Assembly: GCF_964204645.1 (NCBI RefSeq)
Contig: NC_134031.1
Location: forward strand, 4,278,001 to 4,342,000
From: Tubulanus polymorphus
Taxonomy: Eukaryota; Animalia; Nemertea
Length of the DNA stretch: 64,000 bases
Reading direction: 5' to 3'
In this document: piece by piece, positions 9,456 to 47,266 of the stretch
Layout: every line of letters starts with the position of its first letter
Numbering within the stretch: the stretch's first letter is position 1
Program-made: the position numbers and the translations under genes
The notes under the pieces: model-generated
What the model was told of the DNA's origin: nothing
Database searches by the model: none
Seen by the model: the letters and a program-made list of their open reading frames with translations, nothing else

Positions 9456-10256
9456 ATCTGATCCGAATTCGACGTATTTAATCGTGCATTATCGCGTCAA
9501 TCGAGTGTAAAGGCTTGATTGTTTGTTTGTCGGAGTAGGGCAGATACCGTTGCTTTGGCATTACCGCCTTGGTCAGGGCTAAAGCTCGGCTCGTTTGTAC
9601 TCGGAAAAGCTGAACTTCGATATATTCGTATCGATACATTATTGTGTTCATGAAAGCAAGGCAGCGTGTCAGACAGTGAAGGTTGTAAATATTGTAAATA
9701 AATTTCGGAAATAATAGATCTGCTAGATGTACTTATTTTGCGATTTTTGATTCTAAATGGCCGGTAGCCGCAGGACTGAATTTACCCCATTTCTGGAAGT
9801 TGTTGGTGTGGTCGTGGTACTACAAGCCACGCGTTATATAGTACTCATTTCAAGTCCACGTTTCAATTAGTCTTTGAAGCGATCCAGTCCATATCGTGTA
9901 ACCTCATTACTCGCATATCCAGCATCTGGAGCCATTTCCACAGTCTCAGGTTGAGACTTAATTTATACAGACATCATAATGAGTTTTCTTTACAAAGACT
10001 TCCCTGATTCGAGAGTATATTCCGGAAGAATATAGAAGAGATGACCACACCTCCGAATGATTGAAGCAGAAAAAGTTCTTTTTTACATTTTCAAAATTTT
10101 TTTTTATTCTAAAAGGCTAAATGAGTACATAATTTATTAGATACAAACGTAGTGTATTAGATATACAGGAGTTGTGACCACTGAATGAGCGTTTATGTAA
10201 ATGAGATACAACCGACTTAACGAATTCAATACAGCCAGCGGTCGATATCATCCTAG

Positions 10257-10339
10257 ACCCAGTTCCACAGTTGTTCGTTTAGTTCATTTGAGTTTTCTAA
10301 TATCTAAGAATTTTAATCCACGTAAGTGGAGCCAGGTCT
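10257..10339. mobile_element. Short MITE (CCAGTTCCAC ... GTGGARC termini)
   Basis: Imperfect terminal inverted repeats; related copy at ~59496-59595. Confidence 0.45.
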
Positions 10340-11293
10340 TGGTTTAATAAGACTCGCTGCTTTGACTCGGTCGGTGTACTCGGCATAGATCTGGTTGTGC
10401 CGTTCTAAATAATACACAATACAAAATAAATATCATATATGTACAGCAAAATACAAACAAAAAATCGTACAAAATTAATAAATTATCAAATATTTTTACA
10501 TAATTTGTTTACAATAAATGTAAATATTTAAATATACATGGAGTAAACTACAAGCTACATGATGACGTAAATAAGTATACAATCTTAAATTCACAGAATG
10601 AATAACTGGCTTCGAAATTACAAGCACTGCAAAAATAACACCACGCACACTCAACATTTTTTTGAAGTTTTAAGTTAATTACATGTTTTTACTTTCGTGG
10701 TAGATTTCATTTGCGTTCCCGTTTAGGAGATCTGAGAAGGGCTTTCGTCTGCGCTACGACTAAAAAGCAAGGGCAATTTTGTTTCGGACATAATCAGACA
10801 TAATAGATGGTTCCCCGATGAATCTCCTCTACGAAGAGTCCCATGATACGAGCAGTTATCTCGTAGGCTAGAATGAACAAGGGGGAGACCTGTCTGATAT
10901 AATTCGTTGCAATTGATTAATACTGACTTAATAATCATGCTATATATATATAATATCTAGACTAGTACTGTCACTAATTAATTATTGGATACATGTATTT
11001 ACATACCTACATACAAGGCGAACGAATTCTCCAGAATTACGTTGTTTTGGATCTAAATCAATTCAACCCCTTTGATGTAGATTATTACTTCTTTTTCGAT
11101 CGTAATAGACGTAGCTAGGGTCATGCAGGTCACACGTATTTTGTCCACACGCGTCGTTTTGGCCGTCAGATGACCATCAACAGTGTCTTTTGCTTCAAGG
11201 CACACGACGGTCAACCTGACTGTCTGTGACGTCATGCGAGTGAACTCGTACGCTAGTCCAGACGACTCCAACAACGATTTTATTTTCTAAAAC

Positions 11294-12600
11294 TTTTCAA
11301 ACTTAACAATTTTTTTATAGATTTAGTAAACTTTTCAAGATGTTAACGATTTATTTCTATAGATCTTTATAGAATTTCTAATGGTGTCAACCTTTCCAAA
11401 CGAATCCATTATGCCGTTTCAGACGGACAGGATTCGAAATTTAAACTTTGAATCGATATATTTTTCTATAGTATTTTCAAACTTAACAATTCAATTATAA
11501 TTTAATATGGATATAAACTTAATAATGTTTTAACGAGTTATTCGGCGGAATTTCTCCCACCAAACAACGATTCATAAACTATGAATTAATATCTTTTTCT
11601 ATAGTATTTTCAAACTTAACAATTCAATTATAATTTAATATAGATATTAACTTTTAAATGTTTTAACGAGTTATTCGGCGGAATTTCTCCCACCAAACAA
11701 CGATTTATTAACTATGAATTAATATTTTTTTCTATAGTATTTTCAAACTTAACAACTACAGTCAAATCCCGCTTAATCGGGATCGGCTTAATCCAGATTT
11801 TATGATATAATTTAATTTGAATATAAACTCTCGAAGTAATTAACAATGTTTTGAAAGATATTCGTCGGAATTTCTCCCGCCGAATAACCTTTCAAAAATA
11901 AACTCTATACTATGTTTATAATTTCTTGATAATAAAATTGTTCAAACTTAACAAATATATCTCTATTTTAAAGATCTATATATTTCAACAACTTAGAAAT
12001 GGTATTTGATAGGGCTAATCAAAAGATGATTCGAAACTATCAAGTTCCATTTACGGAGCTTAAACTCTAAGCTATATTTTTTTCATAGAATATTCAAACT
12101 TAACAATTTTCAACTATATCTTTATATTCAATCTTTAGAATTTATGAACATTTAACGAGCTTTGAAACGGTATTCGAAATTGTCAAAATGACTCGTCATA
12201 ATAACAATTTTCGAATATCATTTCAAAAATAGACTTTATATATGTTTAGATTTTTATATATTATTTCTTTTAAAATTTTAAAACTTAACAATTGTTTTAT
12301 CATAATCTCTATTTGATTATACTCTAAAAATCTCAACAACTATAGTATATCTTAAGAATGGACGCCGGAAAAAGCGATCTACACACCTCTTTTCAATCGG
12401 ATATCATCTTAAAACTACTGAATTATAATCTTTAAATATATGTATTTTTTTTTCTTCTAAAATTCCAAAACTTAACAACATTTTCAGAGAAAATTTAGTA
12501 ATAACTTCAATCAACAACGTTTGAAAACAACAATCGAATCGCCGGGTGTTTGTTTCATCGAAAGAAACATCCAGCAGACATATTCAACAGTCTTTCGAAC
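11294..12600 (-). repeat. Array of 8 units, each a conserved (TT)CAAACTTAACAA motif plus a variable hairpin
   Basis: Motif at ~11298, 11478, 11611, 11744, 11943, 12095, 12280, 12467 (spacing 133-199 bp), with one hairpin per unit. Units 2 and 3 are near-identical 133-bp duplicates. Confidence 0.85.
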
Positions 12601-12720
12601 TTTAACTATATTATCGTTTTATGGTATTTTGATATTTTTCTCTAAGTTATTCATATACGATTTAGAAAAACATATCAACGTTTCAAGTATCTTTTACTTC
12701 TTAAATATATACATATTATC

Positions 12721-13570
12721 AGGACGGATATAAGATCGGACGGAAGGTCTTCTTTGGACGGATTAACTGGACGGGTTGGTTACCTACACTGCAATAGGTA
12801 TCTATTCATTCTACCTTCGAAGAATCCATATCAACCAATAAGAAAGAACATTTGAAATTTGCAAGTAACACCCTTCTTTCTATAGCTGAATGAATCCTTA
12901 AAATAATTGAAATGAATAAACATTTATTCTATGTACGTGGACGGAATAAGATAAATAGGACGGAAATCTAGCACCAATCGATACAACTAACTATATACAT
13001 AATATCTACAGATATTCTTATCACAGAATAGCGCGTTGGACGGATTACGATAAGTCGGGTTTTTCCGGAAGAATCCTGGCCGGACGCTTTCGGAAGATTC
13101 CGGGCAGTGTCGTAGCTTTGAGTGGGCGGAACGCGTAAGGGCTCGTTATGTCCGGATCACGAGAGAGAGGCTCTCGAGTTCCGAACTCGGAAGTTATTCA
13201 TTTCCGTGGGCAGTGATTAAGCTTCTTTCGCGGACGGATCTATTGAAGGGTAATTTGGATGGCAGTTTTTTTCTAAAAAATTTTTTTTGAAATACCCAAA
13301 TTTGTCTAAAAGATTCCAATCATCTTGAAATTTGGGAATTTGAATATTGGACGACCATGCAAAATTAGAACGAGATTATTCAACTGGGTATTTCAATGGC
13401 AGTTTTTGAGTTAAAAGTATAATTTTTCATGAAATAACCCTCAATGGCAGTGATTGGGCTATAGATATATAAGATAAGTCGACTGAGCACTTATCGGCGA
13501 CCTTGGTAGGTGAACCCACCGGAAACACCTAATCGTAACTCAGCGAGATAAGGACGGGCAAGTAAGGGCA
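12721..13570 (-). promoter_or_regulatory. Cluster of miR-184- and miR-34-complementary sites (on a minus-strand RNA)
   Basis: 7x GGACGGA plus 2x GGACGG and 5x GGCAGT(G), all in the same orientation; several also match the miRNA 3' halves. Confidence 0.6.
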
Positions 13571-16418
13571 AAGCCTTCAATACACCACGAGTAATCGAAA
13601 AGTGAATTGCTCGGCTAGAAGTTTTTTTGAAGTAATATTTTTTTTCAGTTTTTTAAAGTTGATTTTGCCCAGTATTGTATTCATATACAAATGTTACGAT
13701 TTGGTAATTGCCCTCTAAATCTGCCTAAATTAATTAGAGATTAACGGTAATAGTTTTTCTACAAAAGACTGGATTCGCCTAAACGGGAAGCATATAAAAT
13801 CTCACCACGATTTTGTTTCGTTTAAAAAACCACCTTTTACCGTATATAACTAATGAAATAATCAATCATTTCAAACTAAACCTGAGCATTGGAGTAAATA
13901 TTGAATACATAGACAAATTAATTACTAATACGTATTTACAATTGCATAAGTACAGCTGCGCAGCTTTCTACAGGCAAAATAACCAACGTTATGGTATTTC
14001 AGATCTGCGAAAGATATGATGTTTTGTTAGGTCTACTAAATGCGCACCGTTGATATAACATTGATATGAATGATATATTGGCGCGCCGAGGTTACACACG
14101 ACATAAAAAAAAAACTAGCAATTGTACTTCGCTTACGCGCAGGCATGAGCCCCCGGAGGTTGAGTTTGTTTTTCAATGTGGATAAAATCATTTATCTTTT
14201 GAAAACCTCTGACCGGGCCCAGTCACATTGCAAACTAATTAAAAACTATCTATCTAACAGTATTTACATATTTTCAGGCCAAGTAAAATAGGATTTTTGC
14301 GAATGATTTACACTCTAATAGAAAGCGTGATAGAATTATTATTTATCGTGATTATAGATTATTCGATATTAATATATGTTTTTCACCACCATTATCCAGG
14401 GCAAGTTTCATTAGCACCTCTGCGATAATAAATTAATATAACGCCTTTATACAAAAGCCATAATGTGTATAGCGAAATTAGAGGTGGTTTCTGAAATTGT
14501 ACCCGAAATTTAATACGTGAATGTTTGCATGACAATAACATATTGTCGTAGACGGGGAAGGGAATTTAGCCGATGGTTTCCTGAGGAAATTTGTCCCGCT
14601 TTTACACACGGTTGAAGGATTCTAGTTACCATGGGCCGAATCGACCTATTGATGCGCTATATTTGATGATGAAGTGTCCACGAATCGTCGCGTGTCAGCG
14701 CACTTTATACCGCGAGAGCTTCAATACAATGGCTGTTTACATGACAAAGATGTATATGAGTTTATACCGTACCGATACTTGAGAAGGTGTAACTATGGGA
14801 ATTGCGAATCGGGGTCGACATAATGACTTGACTCAGCTCGTCGTCTGCCGTCGTCGCCGGGCGCACTTCCTGGTTTTTATTCGGAGGAATATCATTCTCT
14901 CGCCAAATATCCGTGCTTGGTGGAGACGATTTTTTCGATAGTCGTTATTTCGGTTTTTCAGATCAATTCAAAAGAAGGCGACGAGTTTCGTTATGAAAAA
15001 TCTGTAAAGATAACACGTAGAATCGTTATATTTATGTTAAAAGAATGTGACGGAATTCTTCGTTTTCATCCGAAAAAAATATTTACGTAGATTATTTCAA
15101 AATGTTAATTAACAACAATTAATCGACCATTCCCTACGATTGATAATCAATCATGGACTCGTAATTCGAATATTCGTGGGAAATATCTAAGAACAAACAA
15201 TGACAGTCAATAGAAAAACGGGTTTCTTTTAGAAACGAATCATGATTTTGATTTTTGAGCTCAACGTCGTAAATAACGGAACGTATATTGTGATCTCGTC
15301 CGTTCTAGACAAAACCGATCCTTAATGGAACGAAATATTTCTGTTATTGTAAGGTAAACTCCCTATAAAGCATTTCCCATTCATGAAATTACGCCGGCCT
15401 ACAACATAAATCAAACATAATGTTGAATGAACCATGGTAACCGGTGCCCGACTCGCTGCCCAAACTTGAATCACACGTCGCATTCCAAACACTTGAAATT
15501 GTTGAACATGAATAGTACACTATGCCTCAGCAAAAACTCGGACAATTTCTAAGAATATTCAAAATGAAGTGTTTTTACTAGAGCTCTGGGGACAAACGAC
15601 GACATCGACCCTAATCGTGGGGCTCTCAATTTTCCTTTAGTTTTAATTGCACGCTTTATTCAAACTATTTGGAATAAAGTCTATGTTATTTCTTACAAGA
15701 GATGCATTCCGCGATATAAAGGTGCTCAAGCAGAATTAAATTCATCACTATCCTTCGAACATTTCTTTCTAGTTTATCAAGTGATACTATTATCTCTAAT
15801 GAAATTAAAATCATCGGAAACATTTTTGACTATACAACATTCTTTATACTGATTCATACTTTTATGAAAAGTGCACTTTTGATAGAAGTTCAAACGTACC
15901 TTCGGTTTGAATAAAAAATGGTAATAGTTCTTTTTTCGGGAGATGCGAAATCGAACGTCCGTCGGAGCGCATCAGTTGATATTGATTTTGAAAGAGCTTC
16001 GTTAGTAAATCTCAGTACCTGAAACGAAATATATCAAAATCAATTAAGTTGTTGTTCTTTAATCAAGTTCTAAGCTTCTTAGAACCCAGCGTTGAAAATA
16101 AAATGGACAGGATTGACAAATATTCCATCTAAATTGAATTACCGTGCAAAATTAATTTAATCGAAAGTTTATGTTACTTTAACATATAAGAACTGACATT
16201 TACATTTTCGTAAAGGGAATAATTTCCCGTTTGTTATCAGTAAAACAGTTGATATGTACATACCTGGCAAAAACTGAGGTGTTGGTTAGGATCCGGGTTG
16301 AAAACGGCTCCTGTCCCCCGGCAGGTTGATGGACCTGTCACGGGAGACAGGCGAGCCGGCCGTCTGCGCTCGCGACTGGAACGAGTCGTTGTGACACTTA
16401 GACACAGTAGGTCATCAC

Positions 16419-16572
16419 TATTTATATGGGACAGCAACCAAACAGGTTCTGAGCACGCATATTCGAAGTGAGGACTTGTTGCCAAGGGCTTTTGTTGGGT
16501 TAGCGAGAATCCGCAGGGCGCATTGAAAAGGCACGCGTGCTCGGGCGGGAGAGTCTTTAGAATGGTGATTGG
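16419..16572 (-). promoter_or_regulatory. Pol II core promoter (TATAAATA, GC box, CCAAT)
   Basis: Minus-strand TATAAATA at 16426-16419, GGGCGGG at 16543-16549, CCAAT at 16572-16568; splice donor ~160 nt downstream of the TATA. Confidence 0.65.
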
Positions 16573-17785
16573 TAATCGCGTAGATTCGTGCTCCTCGGTA
16601 AATTAAACAGTAAATTAACAACTGCTTTAATTACATTCACCCGTTATGCACATCACGAATGTTTACAATACTCAGCGTTAATTACGCCTTTACGAAAAAA
16701 CTTGCTTCAATCATCCAGCGTTTGCCTGAACAGAGCCCAGAATAGAAAATTAAGATTTGCGGAATCGTTAAGATACGTACGTATAGGATTTTGCCAAAAA
16801 ATCTTAAATCTGTGTTTTCTTAAATTCTCCATTTTCTGCGAGGAAAACCTCACGGAAAAATCGGTGAAAAAAGTTACTAATATACATATGTGAATTATCT
16901 CGGTGAGAAACGAACTCGCAGCAAATTTTGAAAACACATCTTATGTCCCCAGAACGTTTTAATGGTTCAGCTAAAATATATCGCGCCTGTATGAAAATAA
17001 CGAACGCAGTTTATACGAAGATGAAAATATACGCGCACACTAGCGGCTGTTCACGGACATGTATGGAGGGGTCAAAATTGTGCAATTTTTGAGTGGACGC
17101 CTACATTTATAATCGTCAAACGTAACTAGATTTCTCTGCAACGAATGACATCAGTTCATCTATTGTTATAGTATCTACTGAAGACGGGTTAAGGACACTG
17201 TTTGACGGCTGAAGGTTCTCTGTAGTTTTGGAAAAATCCGCTGCCGTTGAACCTATTCGTATTTGGTTCTAACTAGTAGCTGAATTTCGTCGTAAAGAGG
17301 TTCTACTGTACAGATATATACACATGAACCTGACGGCAAAAGTTCGGTTCTAAAGGTAATGATCTTCAGTGACCAGGTTTCGTTGTTCTCATATCAACCT
17401 CATTCCGCGTACTTATTTTCCGCGTCGCCGTTTCGTTGGATGCAAGACCAACAACACATGATTCACATTTTGAAAACTTTTTTATTTCACTCTTACAAAA
17501 TATAGACATTCGAATAAACAATAAACCCAGAAGATATAAAAAACCATATCCCTTAAGCGAGAGATAATGTATATCATTCAATAAATAACTGTATAAATAA
17601 CTGTATAGAAAACCACAACCCGAAGATGACAATTCAAGCAAAATACTAACAAAATACTGAGGTTCACGCATTCTCAATAGTATAAGCAAATAAACAAACT
17701 TCACATTCTCTTTTTTGTTACAAACTTTTAGTACTTGGATTTCTTTAAGCAAGTTTTCTTTTATATATATTCATAACAAGATTCA

Positions 17786-19589
17786 TCATTTGGATTTCTT
17801 GAGTAAAATGTGAAAAAGCGCTGCCAAACCCGCAGCCAAAATGGCCAACAAGGATGAAACGATAAAAACTAATTGCGTGCAATCATTTCCGTAACAATCA
17901 AAATTAGGTAACAATGGTGAGGTAGTTACATTGGAATAAGAGGTCATATTCGCGTAACTAGTTACCACATGTGAATCATAGACTTTACCGTAAATCAACA
18001 CGGTAACGTACAAAACAATAAATTCGACCATTTTCCCAACCCCGAAATGTAACCCCAAATGATCGTTACCGTAGACCTCGGCAAGAATAACGGGAACGAG
18101 GGTATAAGTAATACTGATAGCCGAGCCTAGTAAAATATTACTTATGATTACAGCAGCTAACGAACGCACGAAAAAAACCAGTACGATAAAGCCTAGTGCA
18201 CACATTGTGTAAGCGAACATAACGAATACATCTCTCGCTACACGTTTGAACAGGTAATCGGAAAGTGGACCGATCAAAACACGCATTACGAGTCCCGATA
18301 GGGTGTTAATCAGCACGATAACAGACACGTATTGGACGAGATGCACGGATTTCAACGTAGGTCCGATGTTGGTTACAAACATGGCCATCAGTCCGCCGAT
18401 TATGGAGAACCCCCACACAAGTGCGTGATAACTCGGATATCCTAATACGCTCAGAAAACCGCAAGCCGTCGATTTATTCGTATACGCCTGTTCAGCGGGA
18501 TGGTGCATCGGGCGTACGCGGACTTCCTCGCCGTCGTCGCTGCTATCGGAAGGAGAAACATCGGGAGAACCGGGAATTACACCCGCAGAACCCGGAATAA
18601 CATCGCGTGAACCGGTTTTATCGACTGGCGAACCGATACCGCCCTCATTATCCGTTAATCTTATGTGTTCATCGTTCGTTTCGTCGGGCGGTAACTCGTG
18701 AAAAAATAGCAACGACAAAATTCCCGTCACAGCCCCGAGTATCCACATCAATAAGATATAACCTTGCAGATCTTGTTTCGCTTCGTGTTTCAGGTGTCCA
18801 CGAACGTAGGCGCCGTTGTAGACGGCGGTGAAAACGAACAAACTCAACTGAAACATCGTGTCCATCACAGCAACGACTTTGGCGTTGTGACGGTTCGGAA
18901 AATTCCGGATGTTCGTTAACAACGCGGTTGTGTAGAGGTACGAAAAACCGTGGGCTGAAAAAAAAAGCGAAGATATCTTTGAAAGTATGCAGCATATGAA
19001 CACGGATGTCTTTATAAACGAATAGATGGTTTTTTCTATTTACGCAAACTTGTCAACAATAGGGAAATTCTGTTACCCGGTAATCAAATTTTCACGGAGT
19101 CAAAGACAGGAGCCAACCAGGATGATTTTAACATTGAAGCTTTTATCGAAACTTACTGATTTAGTTCATCCAATAGGTATTGTATTGAAATTATATATTC
19201 TATTAACTGCTTTAGGTTTACTTTAAACGTATCAGCATATACAGATCAAAATCCAGAGTAAACTGAACATTCATCGTAGATGTAAAATTCATTCATTCAC
19301 CGCATCGCACACATTGTGCAGCACATAATCAGTGAAATAAACAACACAAATCGATTATTACGATAGGGCCTACTTCACTTACCTAAAATACAGAAATAAA
19401 ATGCCATCAAGCCGTAGTGCTGCGAATAAAATACTTTCGCGGAGAATGTTGAATAGACAAGTCCGTATCCTAAGGTAACCAGTATGAGACCGATAGCAGA
19501 GGTAATCGTTGGCCCAGTTTTATCGAATATAAAACCAGAAAAAATTTGTGCACCCAATCCAAACATCTGAGCAGTAGATATCATTTCAA
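17786..19589 (-). CDS. Major facilitator superfamily transporter, MCH1/nodulin-like; first exon not located
   Basis: Exons 19383-19589 and 17786-18954. About 11 hydrophobic helices, MFS motif A variants GFIFDKTGP and GPLSDYLFKR, family-typical C-terminal CYGNDC. Confidence 0.8.
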
Positions 19590-21275: not shown

Positions 21276-22069
21276 TGCATTCAGACAGGACACATATCAG
21301 TGCCGGTCGACTCACTGATTCAACAACAAAATTCCGTAAAAATCTTCAGCATGTTGAAGTTGGCCAGTAATACGTAGAACTAGAACTAGAACTGGTGACC
21401 AATCAATAAATTTTGAATTGAATTAGAATTGTGACGGAGTTTAACGTTAATTACCATTCGTTTGAGTCATACTGAACGTCTTTTTCAGCGCCTGGCTATA
21501 GACGCCGAATACAAAAACACTTCCAGATATAAGTTTTACTATACAGCCCACGGTAAGACCGGTATACCGAAGAATCTTGCGATATTTCGGATTTTTCTTC
21601 AGGTAGGCCGCCATCTTATATCTCCACGCGACCGTGACCTTGTAGTATTTTTAGACGCTGCCTTAACCGCGTCGCCATTTCCTCGATCCTACCACCACGC
21701 ACCGGCATTTTTTCACTGAGCTGGTTTTCAGAGGTTTGTATACGCGAAATTCAGTAATTAATACTCTTAATTAGTAAATTAATCGATTTATTGTATTTAG
21801 GGATGTTTGCAGGGTTTTCTTCAGGCGCTTGGACCTCGATATTAGCCGTCATCGAAACTAATCAATTTTTATTCTTTTTTCTCTTTTTTAGCCTTTCATC
21901 ATGGAAAGGTAGCATCCTTGTTTTATATTTTTTTCTTTTTTTTATATTTTTTTTGCCCGTCCTTGATCAGACGACGTTGAAGGACTGACTGTGTGTGCGC
22001 GTACGTGCGAAAAGCTTCCGATCTCATCATCGCCGCCTCCGAGACTTGAGTGAGCCGCCACCGAGAAAG

Positions 22070-23107
22070 ATGAGTCTGCACAACGAAAACTGCAACTTAA
22101 TCGTGAACTACCTTCCTCAAACGTTGACCGACGACGAGTTCAAGTCGATGTTTAGCACGATCGGACTCGTGAAAAGTAGCAAAATAATCCGCGATAAGAT
22201 TACCGCGTACAGCTACGGGTTCGGATTCGTCGAGTTCGTCAAGCCGGAAGACGCCCAAAAAGCGATATGCACGCTCAGCGGTCTTCAGTTACAGAACAAA
22301 ACGATTAAAGTCGCGTTCGCGCGTCCGCCCGGCGAGGACACGAAAAACACTAATCTCTACATCCGTGGACTTCCGCATTGCATGACTCAGCAAGGTTTGG
22401 AAGAAGAGTTCCGTTCGTACGGCGGAATCGTCCAGTGTAAAGTGCTGACGAACGAATCGGGCCAGTCGAAAGGCGTCGGATTCGTCTTGTTCGAAAAGAA
22501 AGATTCCGCGGAGATCGCGTTGAAAGAAATGAACGGCAAAACGTTGATGGGCGCCGCCGAACCGCTACATATCAAATTCGCCGAAGACAACGCCAAGAAG
22601 GTCAGAGCGCCATCTATGCCGTATCATCATCACCATCCTTACCAGCCGATTCCGCGCGCGCCGTACGGTTGCGGAAGCGGGTACAACAGCGGCCCGCCCG
22701 GTCCCGTTCGCAACCAAGGCAACCGTTTCAATCGGTTCAACCCGATGTCGAATAGCTACAACGGTTCGAACGGCGCCGGCTCGATGGCGACGCCGGGCAT
22801 CGTCGCGCCGCCAATGAACGCGCCGAATTCGACGAACGCCGAAGGCCACGTTTTGTACGTTTACAACGTCGGTACGCACCCCGACGATCACATGATCTGG
22901 TCGTTGTTCGGCACGTACGGAATGGTGTTGAAAGTGAACATTATTCGCGACCACACGAAAGGCATCTGTAAAAATTACGGATTCGTCACGATGGCCAACT
23001 ATAACGACGCGTGCGAGGCGATCAACGCATTGAACGGCACGTACTGTCTCGGTAATCACCCGTATCCGTTGCAAGTGTCTTTCAAAACGACCAAGGCGGA
23101 AAATTAA
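22070..23107 (+). CDS. ELAV/Sex-lethal-family RNA-binding protein, three RRMs, intronless CDS (345 aa)
   Basis: RRM1 NLIVNYLPQ...SYGFGFVEF, linker FARPPGEDTKNTNLYI, RRM2 KGVGFVLF, hinge RFNRFNPM, RRM3 LYVYNV...KNYGFVTM...LQVSFKT. First in-frame ATG at 22070. Confidence 0.92.
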   Translation: MSLHNENCNLIVNYLPQTLTDDEFKSMFSTIGLVKSSKIIRDKITAYSYGFGFVEFVKPEDAQKAICTLSGLQLQNKTIKVAFARPPGEDTKNTNLYIRGLPHCMTQQGLEEEFRSYGGIVQCKVLTNESGQSKGVGFVLFEKKDSAEIALKEMNGKTLMGAAEPLHIKFAEDNAKKVRAPSMPYHHHHPYQPIPRAPYGCGSGYNSGPPGPVRNQGNRFNRFNPMSNSYNGSNGAGSMATPGIVAPPMNAPNSTNAEGHVLYVYNVGTHPDDHMIWSLFGTYGMVLKVNIIRDHTKGICKNYGFVTMANYNDACEAINALNGTYCLGNHPYPLQVSFKTTKAEN

Positions 23108-25951: not shown

Positions 25952-26485
<534 letters not shown>

Positions 26486-33494: not shown

Positions 33495-35866
33495 TCAGAA
33501 ACCTGGTATAACTCGACCTCGTTTTTTGGCCGTGTCGATTTTCCGTTTCAGATTCTGATCTTTTCTCGCGCGGATGTTTTTCGTGCGTTTATCTTGTTTC
33601 TCTTTCATGCGTTTTTCCGTCGCCGACGTTCGCTCTTCCCATTTCTTTTTCCGCGTGTTCTTCATTTTCTCCTTGCGTTTCAACGCGCGTTTTAACATTT
33701 CCGGATCGTCTTTCACTTTCAAGCCTTCCGCCTTTTGCAACGCTTTCTCCCACTGATTTTTCTTTTCGAGTTTCTCCGCTTTTTCGGCCGCGTCGGAATT
33801 TTTCAAATCCTCAACGGTTTTTCGTTTCTTTTCGACTTTTTCTAACAACGTTTTGTAGTCTTTTCCCGATAGACTACTTTTCTTTTCTTTCTCGCCCGCA
33901 TCTCTAAAATCGAACTTACTGAACACCATTTTCTGTTGGTTGTAAATCGGTTTGACAGCCGTTCCGTTTACAAGTTTTTTATTACCCCCGGGAGACCCTA
34001 AAACATCAGTCAAAGCGCTACCTTTCACTTTACTTTTTTGTTTCTCTATTTTACGCTTTATTTTATTTTTCAGTTTGCTTTGTTTTCGCTTAAGTCGCTT
34101 CATTTCAACGGTTTCACTGTTGGATTTTCTTTTACCTGAAAAGGAATCGAGACAAAACTAAATATCATCGAAGCGCCCCACATTGCATATATGCTAAACA
34201 GAACAACGAATCAGTACATACTTTTCAGTTCCTGTAGTCTTTCGTGTAACTTCTGTCTGGCCTCGTCTAACGATGTCGAAACTACAGCTCGAGGTAGGGC
34301 TGTAGATTTTTTATTCGTTTTATTCTTCTGTTTTTTATTCTTTAGTTTAGTGACTGTAAAGACAGCAGAAAAGAAACCTCATGAGCTATAATCGCTAGAA
34401 AAGAGTTGGGGGAATGGGGGAAACTAAAATGGATTTAGTGCATTCTATAAGGAGGACCTCCGCTGTCGACTGTGCCAAATACATTGGATTTTAAAGTGTA
34501 TTTGTACATCGTATTTGTATGACAAACCTGTCGACACTATATGAGGTAGAGAACGGTTTTACCTCAACAGCTTAACTGCGCAGAGTGACCACTTTTATTT
34601 GATTTGCTAATCTCCAGACTATTCCCTGACATTTAAGTTGTTTTCCCTAACTTGATCTGCTAAGAATCCAATCAATTAATACAGTCAAATACGTAAAAAA
34701 ATAGAAGGAAACTGTTTGATTTATGCACAATCAAACTATCTTAACAATATTCCCCCATTTTACCCTGATCTTTTAGCTTTTTTTTAAACCAAATTCTCTG
34801 TTTTGAAGAAAAGAAAATTTGATTTCCAGATAAGTGGCCACCCTGCTGCGGTAGTTTGGGGTTAAATTAGTTCATTTTAAAAATAATTCAACAATGTCGT
34901 CACTGAAACCGATTCCAGGAACGAGTTTCTCATTCGCAGCTTTAACATTCTGTTTTAATAACTTACAATTATCGCCATCATTATCCGGTTCATCGACTTC
35001 CATGTCTTCACCATTAGAGTCACTATCAACAGCGTTATTCACATCCGATACTAATTGCGAAATACAGGTTTTATTATTCGGGTCGTATTTCATTCGTTTC
35101 AGTTGCGATTTCGCCGAAGTCGGTTCCTTTTTCGCCTTCTTCGCATTTGGCATGGTTTCTGTAACGACATTCGTAACAAGATGTCACTTTTCTTGCATGT
35201 AAAATCAGGCTCCCGACACATTTAGTCGTTCCTGGATATAACGGGTTTTAAAGGAGAAAATTTCAATTTCGAGAAATTGTCCGCACCACCTTCATATCCC
35301 AATTGCTGAAGACTCCTCCAAAATTGGTCCTGTTTATCCGTTATCTACTGCACAACTTCAAACTAGACAAACATTCTTACAGGTAATAGCCTATTTCTCA
35401 AAATTGAAGGAGTTGAAAGGAGTTTGAGGCATTTTGCTCAAATTTAAGGAGTTTGAAGCACCTTTAAAAGCATTTTCAGTTTTAAACTGAAATTACTTTT
35501 AAAGGTGCTGACTTTAGAACAAGTGCTTTTAATGAATCAAGGAGCCATAGGGACCCAGTAAATAGTCTAAGGTGAATGCATTTGTTTGATGAGATATGAT
35601 TATGATTGACATTAACAAGCAAATGTTTACACGAATATTGTCTATGACAGATATGAAGAAATTCATCAGCAAATCATATTTCATTGTTGTGATTTAGTTT
35701 TCTAAATCATACCATCCTTTAGCTTGGCTTTTTTCATTTTTTTCTCCTGAAACGCTGCTCGCGCGTCGCTTGAAAAATAATTTTCCGGCGGAATCATGTC
35801 GACCATCTTGGTGAAAAAATTGCTGTCGACTTTCATTGCCGATCGTTTATCACCGTTGCCAGCCAT
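33495..35866 (-). CDS. SURF6: Surfeit locus protein 6 (nucleolar, Rrp14 family)
   Basis: Exons 35713-35866, 34967-35158, 34222-34353, 33495-34135. Motifs: MVFSKFDF, WEKALQKAEGLKVKDDPEMLKRALKRKEK, KKKWEER, KKRGRVIPGF; N-terminal Rrp14-like DMIPPENY. Confidence 0.93.
34581..34845. mobile_element. CAGGGTGGCCAC-TIR MITE, 5-bp TSD
   Basis: CTGCG flanks both ends. Confidence 0.75.

Positions 35867-40909: not shown

Positions 40910-47266
<6,357 letters not shown>

What the first reader, a model, noticed from the sequence alone, without database searches (positions are those of the whole stretch)
12721..13570. About ten same-orientation sites complementary to miR-184, many with 3'-supplementary pairing
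GGACGGA, nucleotides 2-8 of miR-184 (UGGACGGAGAACUGAUAAGGGC, recalled), occurs 7 times in ~520 bp: 12722, 12738, 12756, 12939, 12958, 13038, 13232, three of them as the 8-mer TGGACGGA. GGACGG also occurs at 12769 and 13552. Far less than one copy is expected by chance. The flanks differ but repeatedly mimic the miRNA 3' half: TGGACGGA-TTAC-GATAAG (13037), TGGACGGA-ATAA-GATAA (12938), TGGACGGA-TT-AACTG (12755), GGACGGG-CAAG-TAAGGGC (13552), TGGGCGGA-ACGCG-TAAGGGC (13123). On a minus-strand RNA these are seed plus central bulge plus 3' pairing sites, the geometry of sponges and target-directed miRNA decay triggers.
Basis: partly seen in the sequence, partly recalled or inferred. Interest (0 to 1): 0.9.

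Follow-up and report, generated by a model that had tools for sequence, protein, structure and literature searches.

The report
miR-184 binding-site cluster on a lncRNA
A spliced non-coding RNA of the ribbon worm Tubulanus polymorphus carries nine closely spaced docking sites for the microRNA miR-184 (plus five for miR-34), so it most likely acts as a natural decoy for these microRNAs, but nobody has yet measured binding.

Summary
GGACGGA occurs 7 times and GGACGG 9 times on the + strand of 12722-13557. Dinucleotide shuffles of the stretch give 0.29 GGACGG on average and never more than 3.

The genome is Tubulanus polymorphus, a nemertean. It encodes the recalled miR-184 exactly, in two hairpins on contig C12. 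Seven more hairpins on C7 share nt 2-8 and nt 13-20.

RNA-derived contigs show a minus-strand, GT..AG-spliced, TATA-preceded transcript of about 5 kb. It has no ORF above 71 aa, and its last exon contains the cluster. The sites therefore lie on a real RNA in the pairing orientation.

Six of nine sites also match at least 5 contiguous nt of the miR-184 3' half at a workable offset, against about 0.9 expected (P<=0.002). An energy-based test is weaker (P 0.01-0.11).

Five miR-34 seed matches interleave on the same strand. Of 50 conserved seeds tested, only these two are enriched.

The stretch is single copy, is not a mobile element and is not a set of hairpins.

No site reaches TDMD-grade 3' pairing. 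The best reading is a decoy lncRNA, or a lncRNA controlled by miR-184. Binding, miRNA expression and conservation remain untested.

The scan's first readers also noted another miR-184 site cluster 0.5 Mb away (s1-511868).

The parts
12721..12790 (-). Block of four miR-184 seed matches 13-18 nt apart. On the + strand, nt 2 of the miRNA-like word lies at 12722 (7mer-m8 plus nt 15-19), 12738 (7mer-m8; nt 2-10 for the C7 variants), 12756 (8mer plus nt 10-14) and 12769 (7mer-A1).
12938..12985 (-). Two miR-184 sites: 12939 (8mer plus nt 15-19, or nt 14-18) and 12958 (7mer-m8; nt 2-10 for one C7 variant).
13037..13054 (-). The best canonical site: an 8mer seed match, a 4-nt target loop, then pairing to miR-184 nt 14-19.
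13123..13142 (-). Seed-mismatched site (nt 4) with a 7-nt match to the miRNA 3' end, nt 16-22.
13231..13252 (-). 7mer-m8 site plus nt 17-21.
13551..13569 (-). 6mer seed match plus a 7-nt match to the miRNA 3' end, nt 16-22.
13102..13452 (-). Five interleaved miR-34 seed matches (GGCAGT on + at 13103, 13209, 13261, 13398 and 13446; three are GGCAGTG).
   Evidence: the miR-34 hairpin of this genome is shown
16261..16395 (-). Exon 1 of the host transcript. The contig reaches 16376, and the start near 16395 is inferred from the TATA box.
16419..16427 (-). TATAAATA-type box on the minus strand, about 25-45 nt upstream of the contig end.
   Evidence: inference
15900..16015 (-). Exon 2.
   Evidence: joints; splice consensus
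10115..15001 (-). Long last exon that holds the site cluster. RNA contigs cover it down to about 10238. The end is inferred from AATAAA signals at 10133 and 10103.

Best explanation
The stretch is a dense cluster of real binding sites for the miR-184 family, interleaved with miR-34 sites. It lies in the middle of the long last exon of a spliced, apparently non-coding minus-strand RNA of about 5 kb in Tubulanus polymorphus. Argonaute loaded with miR-184 would dock by seed pairing (nt 2-8). At most sites it would also dock by a short second helix to the 3' block that all nine miR-184 paralogues share (nt 13-22), looping out the central nucleotides in which the paralogues differ. With nine sites in 850 nt, several of them 13-25 nt apart, one RNA molecule can hold many miRNA complexes. 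I take the main effect to be titration: a decoy or sponge that buffers the expanded miR-184 family and miR-34. Shown here: the motifs and their enrichment, the cognate miRNA genes, the transcript and its strand, the lack of a long ORF, and 3' complementarity above chance. Inferred: AGO binding, co-expression, and whether the miRNA or the lncRNA is the regulated party. I put about 0.85 on these being genuine miRNA sites and about 0.45 on the net role being a decoy.
For: Motif counts and shuffles support enrichment. The exact miR-184 is present in the same genome, with an Rfam mir-184 hit, and nine hairpins fold well. A minus-strand spliced RNA covers the cluster, the introns have no depth, and a second study's contigs cover it too. 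The splice consensus is canonical and there is no ORF above 71 aa. Of 50 conserved seeds, only miR-184 (7 vs 0 on the other strand) and miR-34 (3 vs 0) are enriched; the other 48 give 2 vs 3. The 3' pairing statistic gives P<=0.002, and five of the six sites with a run of at least 5 nt match within the family-invariant block nt 14-22. The region is single copy. A review cited here states that only about 5% of conserved target sites have 3'-supplementary pairing (PMC9880601), so 6 of 9 is unusual.
Against: There are no small-RNA data, AGO-CLIP data or stoichiometry. The energy-based test of 3' pairing is only marginal. Conservation cannot be tested, because the nearest protein relative found for the neighbouring gene (Lineus longissimus) is only 29% identical. 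A trace of a roughly 285-bp internal duplication means that not all sites are independent events. Strand rests on splice dinucleotides, since contigs carry no strand information. Sponge effects generally need high transcript abundance, which contig depth cannot establish.
Confidence: 0.45

Rival explanations
1. The sites are real, but the lncRNA is the regulated party. miR-184 and miR-34 clear or restrict this transcript in cells that express them, as for a heavily targeted 3' UTR, with no meaningful effect on the miRNAs.
For: It rests on the same evidence as the best explanation. Closely spaced sites are the arrangement known to give cooperative repression (established knowledge). Nothing here shows the high abundance that titration requires.
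Against: Repression by deadenylation and decay is a costly way to control a non-coding RNA. 3'-supplementary pairing at most sites, and two sites that pair to the extreme 3' end, look tuned for affinity to the miRNA rather than needed for simple repression.
Confidence: 0.3
2. The RNA is a TDMD trigger. One or more sites induce ZSWIM8-dependent destruction of miR-184, as Cyrano does for miR-7.
For: There is a central loop plus 3' pairing at several sites. Sites 13123 and 13552 pair with nt 16-22, including the 3' terminus. Another locus 0.5 Mb away has an 8mer plus 9-nt 3' pairing.
Against: Known triggers combine an intact seed with near-complete 3' pairing (PMC9880601). Here the intact-seed sites have only 5-6 3' pairs, and the two 7-pair sites have a 6mer or a mismatched seed.
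Confidence: 0.1
3. This is not a miRNA feature. It is a cluster of DNA-level sites for a transcription factor, or a product of local duplication or decayed simple repeat, or the relic of an antisense copy of a mir-184 hairpin cluster.
For: (GGAC)n-type microsatellites are common in this genome and account for nearly all other triple clusters of the motif. A faint 285-bp duplication is visible. The same chromosome carries a 7-hairpin mir-184 cluster.
Against: The spacers are unique sequence, not simple repeat. All 9 copies have one orientation, matching the transcript. A second independent motif equals the miR-34 seed. The flanks resemble the miR-184 3' half, which a DNA-binding motif would not require. 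There is no significant homology to the mir-184 clusters beyond the mature-like pieces. The region is single copy. Rfam finds no hairpin, and the 13-18-nt spacing excludes hairpin units.
Confidence: 0.1

Closest known systems
CDR1as / ciRS-7 (vertebrate miR-7 sponge RNA)
   Same: It is a non-coding RNA with many same-orientation seed matches for one conserved miRNA. The sites are bulged rather than sliceable, and it also has a site for a second miRNA (established knowledge; PMC9880601).
   Different: CDR1as is circular and has more than 60 sites. Here the RNA is a linear spliced transcript with 9-10 sites, no back-splice joint was seen, and there is no sequence relationship.
Cyrano, NREP/libra, herpesvirus HSUR1 and Drosophila Marge (TDMD triggers)
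   Same: They share the layout of seed match, central loop and 3' pairing on a non-coding or UTR sequence.
   Different: Those triggers use a single site with near-complete 3' pairing. Here there are many sites with only 5-7 3' pairs each.
Multi-site miRNA targets such as lin-14 (lin-4), lin-41 and HMGA2 (let-7)
   Same: They carry seven or so sites for one miRNA within about 1-3 kb, some bulged and with 3' pairing (recalled, established knowledge).
   Different: Those sites lie in the 3' UTRs of protein-coding mRNAs. Here no ORF above 71 aa precedes the sites, and the density is higher (7 sites in 520 nt).
Plant IPS1-type target mimics
   Same: It is a non-coding RNA whose bulged site sequesters a miRNA without being cut.
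   Different: It comes from plants, has a single site with a bulge at the cleavage position, and pairs extensively.

Membership tests
miRNA decoy / sponge lncRNA | The sites lie on a transcribed RNA in the orientation complementary to the miRNA. | tested here: met
   A spliced contig has CT..AC gaps, which are minus-strand GT..AG introns. It adjoins, with a one-base gap at a polymorphic position (13368), the contig that covers 12615-13367. The introns have zero depth, and the splice consensus is canonical.
miRNA decoy / sponge lncRNA | There are multiple seed matches beyond chance. | tested here: met
   9 GGACGG observed against 0.29 in shuffles, with a maximum of 3 in 2000.
miRNA decoy / sponge lncRNA | The cognate miRNA is encoded by the same organism. 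| tested here: met
   The exact 21-mer occurs twice on C12. There is an Rfam RF00657 hit at 67 bits. Nine hairpins fold with the mature sequence in the 3' arm.
miRNA decoy / sponge lncRNA | The host RNA is non-coding. | tested here: met
   The longest ATG ORF in the spliced model is 71 aa, and it lies far 3'. The open frame across exons 1-3 has no Met. A small ORF, or further 5' exons, cannot be excluded.
miRNA decoy / sponge lncRNA | AGO occupancy and an abundance comparable to the miRNA's target pool. | not testable with these tools
   Only contigs were available, and contig depth is not a measure of expression. No small-RNA or CLIP data exist.
TDMD trigger | An intact seed match together with extensive, near-complete pairing to the miRNA 3' region. 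| tested here: not met
   The best intact-seed site is an 8mer plus nt 14-19 (6 pairs). The 7-pair 3'-end matches accompany a 6mer seed or a seed mismatched at nt 4.
TDMD trigger | ZSWIM8-dependent loss of the miRNA. | not testable with these tools
   This needs genetics or knockdown.
mir-184 precursor genes | A hairpin with the mature sequence in the 3' arm, or a covariance-model match. | tested here: not met
   There are no Rfam hits in the window at the gathering threshold, nor at E<=1 in 10000-16600. No full-length match exists with up to 3 mismatches. Seeds lie 13-18 nt apart.
Mobile element / iteron array | Multiple genomic copies, terminal repeats or element genes. | tested here: not met
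   There is only a self match for 12700-13600. In 10100-16450 only a 45-nt piece at 11756-11801 is dispersed. There are no long ORFs.

The most novel reading that the evidence does not exclude
This RNA is a dedicated, linear, multi-miRNA decoy. It evolved to bind every member of a lineage-specific nine-gene miR-184 family by pairing only to the parts they share (the seed and the invariant 3' block) and skipping the variable centre. Together with the second site cluster 0.5 Mb away and the near-perfect sites beside mir-184 itself, it forms a miR-184 buffering or turnover network in a spiralian. That would be the first natural sponge system of this kind outside vertebrates and viruses.
Probability: 0.25. 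Interest if true: 0.75.

Novelty: new member of a known kind. Interest (0 to 1): 0.55.

Why it matters
Convincing natural miRNA sponges are few, and most ceRNA claims rest on one or two weak sites. Here a single-copy lncRNA has nine same-sense sites for one deeply conserved miRNA, and 3' pairing at most of them. It also has a second site set for miR-34, and the cognate miRNA family has expanded from the single copy I recall as usual in animals to nine hairpins. This makes it a clean candidate for asking three questions: whether site-dense decoys exist in invertebrates, whether they co-evolve with miRNA gene dosage, and whether seed-plus-3'-block pairing is a way to capture a whole paralogue family. 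It is still a computational candidate in a non-model animal.

Tried and rejected
(1) Plus-strand mir-184-like hairpins: rejected. Rfam finds nothing, there is no full-length match, and the seeds are too close together.

(2) Mobile element or iteron: rejected. The stretch is single copy.

(3) Decayed (GGAC)n microsatellite: such repeats explain almost all other triple clusters in the genome, but the spacers here are unique sequence.

(4) Relic of a duplicated mir-184 cluster read antisense: blastn against both clusters gave nothing better than E=0.27. This is neither supported nor excluded.

(5) miR-34 3' pairing: not above chance.

(6) Is the upstream array motif TCAAACTTAACAA a site for a third miRNA? 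It has 43 genomic copies. The 37 copies outside this locus were fetched and folded, and none sits in a miRNA-like hairpin.

(7) Coding potential of the transcript: none found.

(8) Conservation: not testable. The only other nemertean hit for the neighbouring MFS gene is 29% identical.

(9) Literature: no paper on Tubulanus microRNAs or on an invertebrate miR-184 sponge.

(10) Polymorphism: none of 14 variants seen in 12600-13700 falls in a miR-184 site footprint, against about 2.6 expected (P about 0.05). This is suggestive only.

(11) The bacterial promoter scan is irrelevant for this eukaryote.

Full report
OBSERVATION. GGACGGA lies on the + strand at 12722, 12738, 12756, 12939, 12958, 13038 and 13232. 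Three of these are TGGACGGA, and GGACGG recurs at 12769 and 13552. No copy lies on the opposite strand between 10 and 16.7 kb. GGACGG and GGACGGA are the most frequent 6-mer and 7-mer of 12600-13700. Dinucleotide shuffles of that stretch give 0.29 GGACGG on average and never more than 3 in 2000, against 9 observed. From local composition, 0.014 GGACGGA are expected in 520 nt.

ORGANISM AND THE miRNA. The genome has 268 Mb in 77 contigs. The neighbouring MFS-transporter exon (17786-19003, minus strand) is 100% identical to an NCBI protein of Tubulanus polymorphus, a palaeonemertean ribbon worm. Two copies lie 930 bp apart on contig C12, and one of them scores 67 bits against Rfam mir-184. Both fold as hairpins with the mature sequence in the 3' arm. 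A further cluster of seven such hairpins lies within about 2 kb at C7:15.05 Mb. The nine paralogues share nt 2-8 and nt 13-20 and differ at nt 9-12. A mir-34 hairpin is present on C6.

THE RNA. Contigs of public run X1 laid on 10600-16600 include one that joins 13369-15001, 15900-16015 and 16261-16376. Both skipped pieces begin with CT and end with AC, which is GT..AG on the minus strand. The extended splice sites are canonical (GTATGT and GTACGT donors; pyrimidine-rich CAG acceptors). X1 has no depth in either intron, so it is RNA. Its other contigs cover 12615-13367 (the cluster), 11726-12609 and 10600-11490, and the last runs on to about 10238. The contig breaks coincide with polymorphic positions or with a 133-nt tandem repeat. 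A second study's run (X3, 2014) also covers the cluster and not the introns. X2 behaves as genomic DNA. A TATAAATA box on the minus strand at 16419-16427 sits just upstream of the contig end, and AATAAA signals lie at 10133 and 10103. The model is therefore a three-exon, roughly 5.1-kb minus-strand transcript. Its longest ATG ORF is 71 aa and lies far downstream, so I treat it as a lncRNA. The cluster lies about 1.7-2.5 kb from its 5' end.

SPECIFICITY. I counted 7-mer seed matches for 50 recalled conserved bilaterian and spiralian miRNA families on both strands of 12600-13700. miR-184 gives 7 against 0 and miR-34 gives 3 against 0 (6-mers: 9 and 5 against 0). The other 48 together give 2 against 3. 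GGCAGT occurs 5 times against 0.09 in shuffles. Two different enriched words thus both equal the seeds of deeply conserved miRNAs, both in the orientation of the transcript. That is very hard to reconcile with a DNA-level motif.

3' PAIRING. For each of the nine GGACGG sites I took the longest contiguous identity between the 24 nt after the seed and miR-184 nt 9-22, allowing a loop asymmetry of up to 6. Six sites reach at least 5 nt. Their matched nucleotides are nt 15-19, 10-14, 15-19, 14-19, 17-21 and 16-22. The seed-mismatched site at 13123 adds another 16-22 match. Expectation is 0.8-1.0 such sites, whether the miRNA 3' half is permuted, random positions of the exon are used, or the flanks are shuffled (P<=0.002). 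The summed run length gives P 0.003-0.012. A duplex-energy statistic against seed-preserving shuffles of nt 9-22 is weaker: z from -1.2 to -2.4, with 1-11% of shuffles as good, depending on the paralogue. The 3' complementarity is therefore real but modest. Five of the six matched segments fall in the block that all nine paralogues share. Three sites extend the seed helix to nt 9-10 only for the C7 variants. A review states that about 5% of conserved sites have 3'-supplementary pairing (PMC9880601). The miR-34 sites show no significant 3' pairing.

ALTERNATIVES.
- Mobile element or iteron: the stretch is single copy. In 10100-16450 only a 45-nt piece at 11756-11801 is dispersed.
- Microsatellite decay: other triple clusters of the motif in the genome are almost all (GGAC)n-like repeats, but here the spacers are unique.
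- Hairpin genes: Rfam finds nothing, and the 13-18-nt spacing excludes hairpin units.
- Relic of a mir-184 cluster: there is no significant similarity beyond the mature-like pieces.
- Internal duplication: a faint unit of about 285 bp (12690-12975 against 12976-13260) makes sites 12756/13038 and 12939/13232 possible paralogues. The rest of the unit has diverged to near randomness while the seed matches persist. This fits selection, but it also means the sites are not nine independent events.

MECHANISM. Shown: motifs, cognate genes, transcript, strand and 3' complementarity. Inferred: AGO-miR-184 complexes occupy the sites, and several can bind side by side, because four seeds lie within 55 nt and miR-34 and miR-184 seeds lie 20-23 nt apart at 13103/13124 and 13209/13232. 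Because pairing avoids the variable centre, one site type serves all paralogues. I favour titration, that is a decoy (0.45), over the lncRNA simply being repressed by the miRNAs (0.30). TDMD is less likely (0.10), because no intact-seed site has more than 6 3' pairs. Non-miRNA explanations retain about 0.10.

COMPARISON. Functionally this resembles CDR1as (many bulged sites for one miRNA), multi-site targets such as lin-14 or HMGA2, and plant target mimics. It is not homologous to any of them. It is linear and spliced, and it is paired with an expanded miRNA family. It meets the testable criteria of a decoy lncRNA and fails the pairing criterion of a TDMD trigger.

OTHER NOTES OF THE SCAN. First readers had flagged the host lncRNA (s1-511869), the miR-34 sites (s1-511913) and the upstream hairpin array (s1-511893). 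They also flagged another miR-184 site cluster 0.5 Mb upstream (s1-511868). I looked at that cluster: two words on the minus strand of C7:3.77 Mb read TGGACGGA, then a 4-nt loop, then a 9-nt or a 6-nt match from nt 12 on. It shares no detectable DNA similarity with this locus. A follow-up agent reported near-perfect miR-184 sites beside the C12 mir-184 genes (s1-487506); I did not test this.

LIMITS. There are no small-RNA, CLIP or stranded read data. There is no close relative for a conservation test. Contig depth cannot be read as abundance. None of 14 polymorphisms in 12600-13700 hits a miR-184 footprint, against about 2.6 expected, which is only suggestive.

Noticed in passing
G000:C7:15050879-15052828 (L020:4880-6829) and G000:C12:1911058-1912008 (L002): The mir-184 family is expanded to nine well-folding hairpins: a 7-hairpin cluster on C7 and a pair on C12. 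The mature arms share nt 2-8 and nt 13-20 but differ at nt 9-12. From memory, miR-184 is a single gene in most animals.
   Followed up: partly
window 13102-13452: Five miR-34 seed matches (GGCAGT) lie on the same strand as the miR-184 sites and interleave with them, 20-23 nt from miR-184 sites at 13103/13124 and 13209/13232. They are enriched (5 vs 0.09 in shuffles), but their 3' pairing is not above chance.
   Followed up: yes
window 11294-12600: An array of eight AACTTAACAA motifs separates units of 133-199 nt, each holding a stem-loop. In 6 of 7 units the minus-strand RNA folds better than the plus strand, and in three of them by 10-14 kcal/mol, because G:U pairs exist only on the minus strand. 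This is the same strand as the transcript. None of the 37 other genomic copies of the motif lies in a miRNA-like hairpin.
   Followed up: partly
window 11756-11801: A 45-nt piece matches at least 18 other places in the genome at 78-96% identity, so it is a short dispersed repeat inside the lncRNA exon. It causes loose contig ends in the read lay.
   Followed up: no
G000:C7:3772661-3773017 (L058 minus strand 2661 and 3017): Two words read TGGACGGA, then a 4-nt loop, then CTGATAAGG or CTGATA. This gives seed plus up to 9 3' pairs to miR-184, which is closer to TDMD geometry than anything in my stretch. The locus lies 0.5 Mb away on the same chromosome and is the subject of note s1-511868.
   Followed up: partly
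window 12970 and 13020: Single 8-mer words identical to the recalled 5' ends of miR-29 (TAGCACCA) and miR-2 (TATCACAG) lie on the + strand inside the cluster. One copy of each is within chance.
   Followed up: partly
window 17786-19003 (-), 21995-23107 (+), 25952-26476 (-), 33495-34103 (-), 43386-46110 (-): Neighbouring coding exons are an MFS transporter (LOC141908719), a three-RRM ELAV-like protein in one 370-aa ORF, a UPF0220-family (PF05255) protein, SURF6 and two C2H2 zinc-finger ORFs.
   Followed up: partly
L002 minus strand 2384 (G000:C12, 66 nt downstream of mir-184): A 13-nt sense copy of miR-184 nt 2-14 (GGACGGAGAACTG) lies just after the hairpin. It is probably a partial duplicate.
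   Followed up: no
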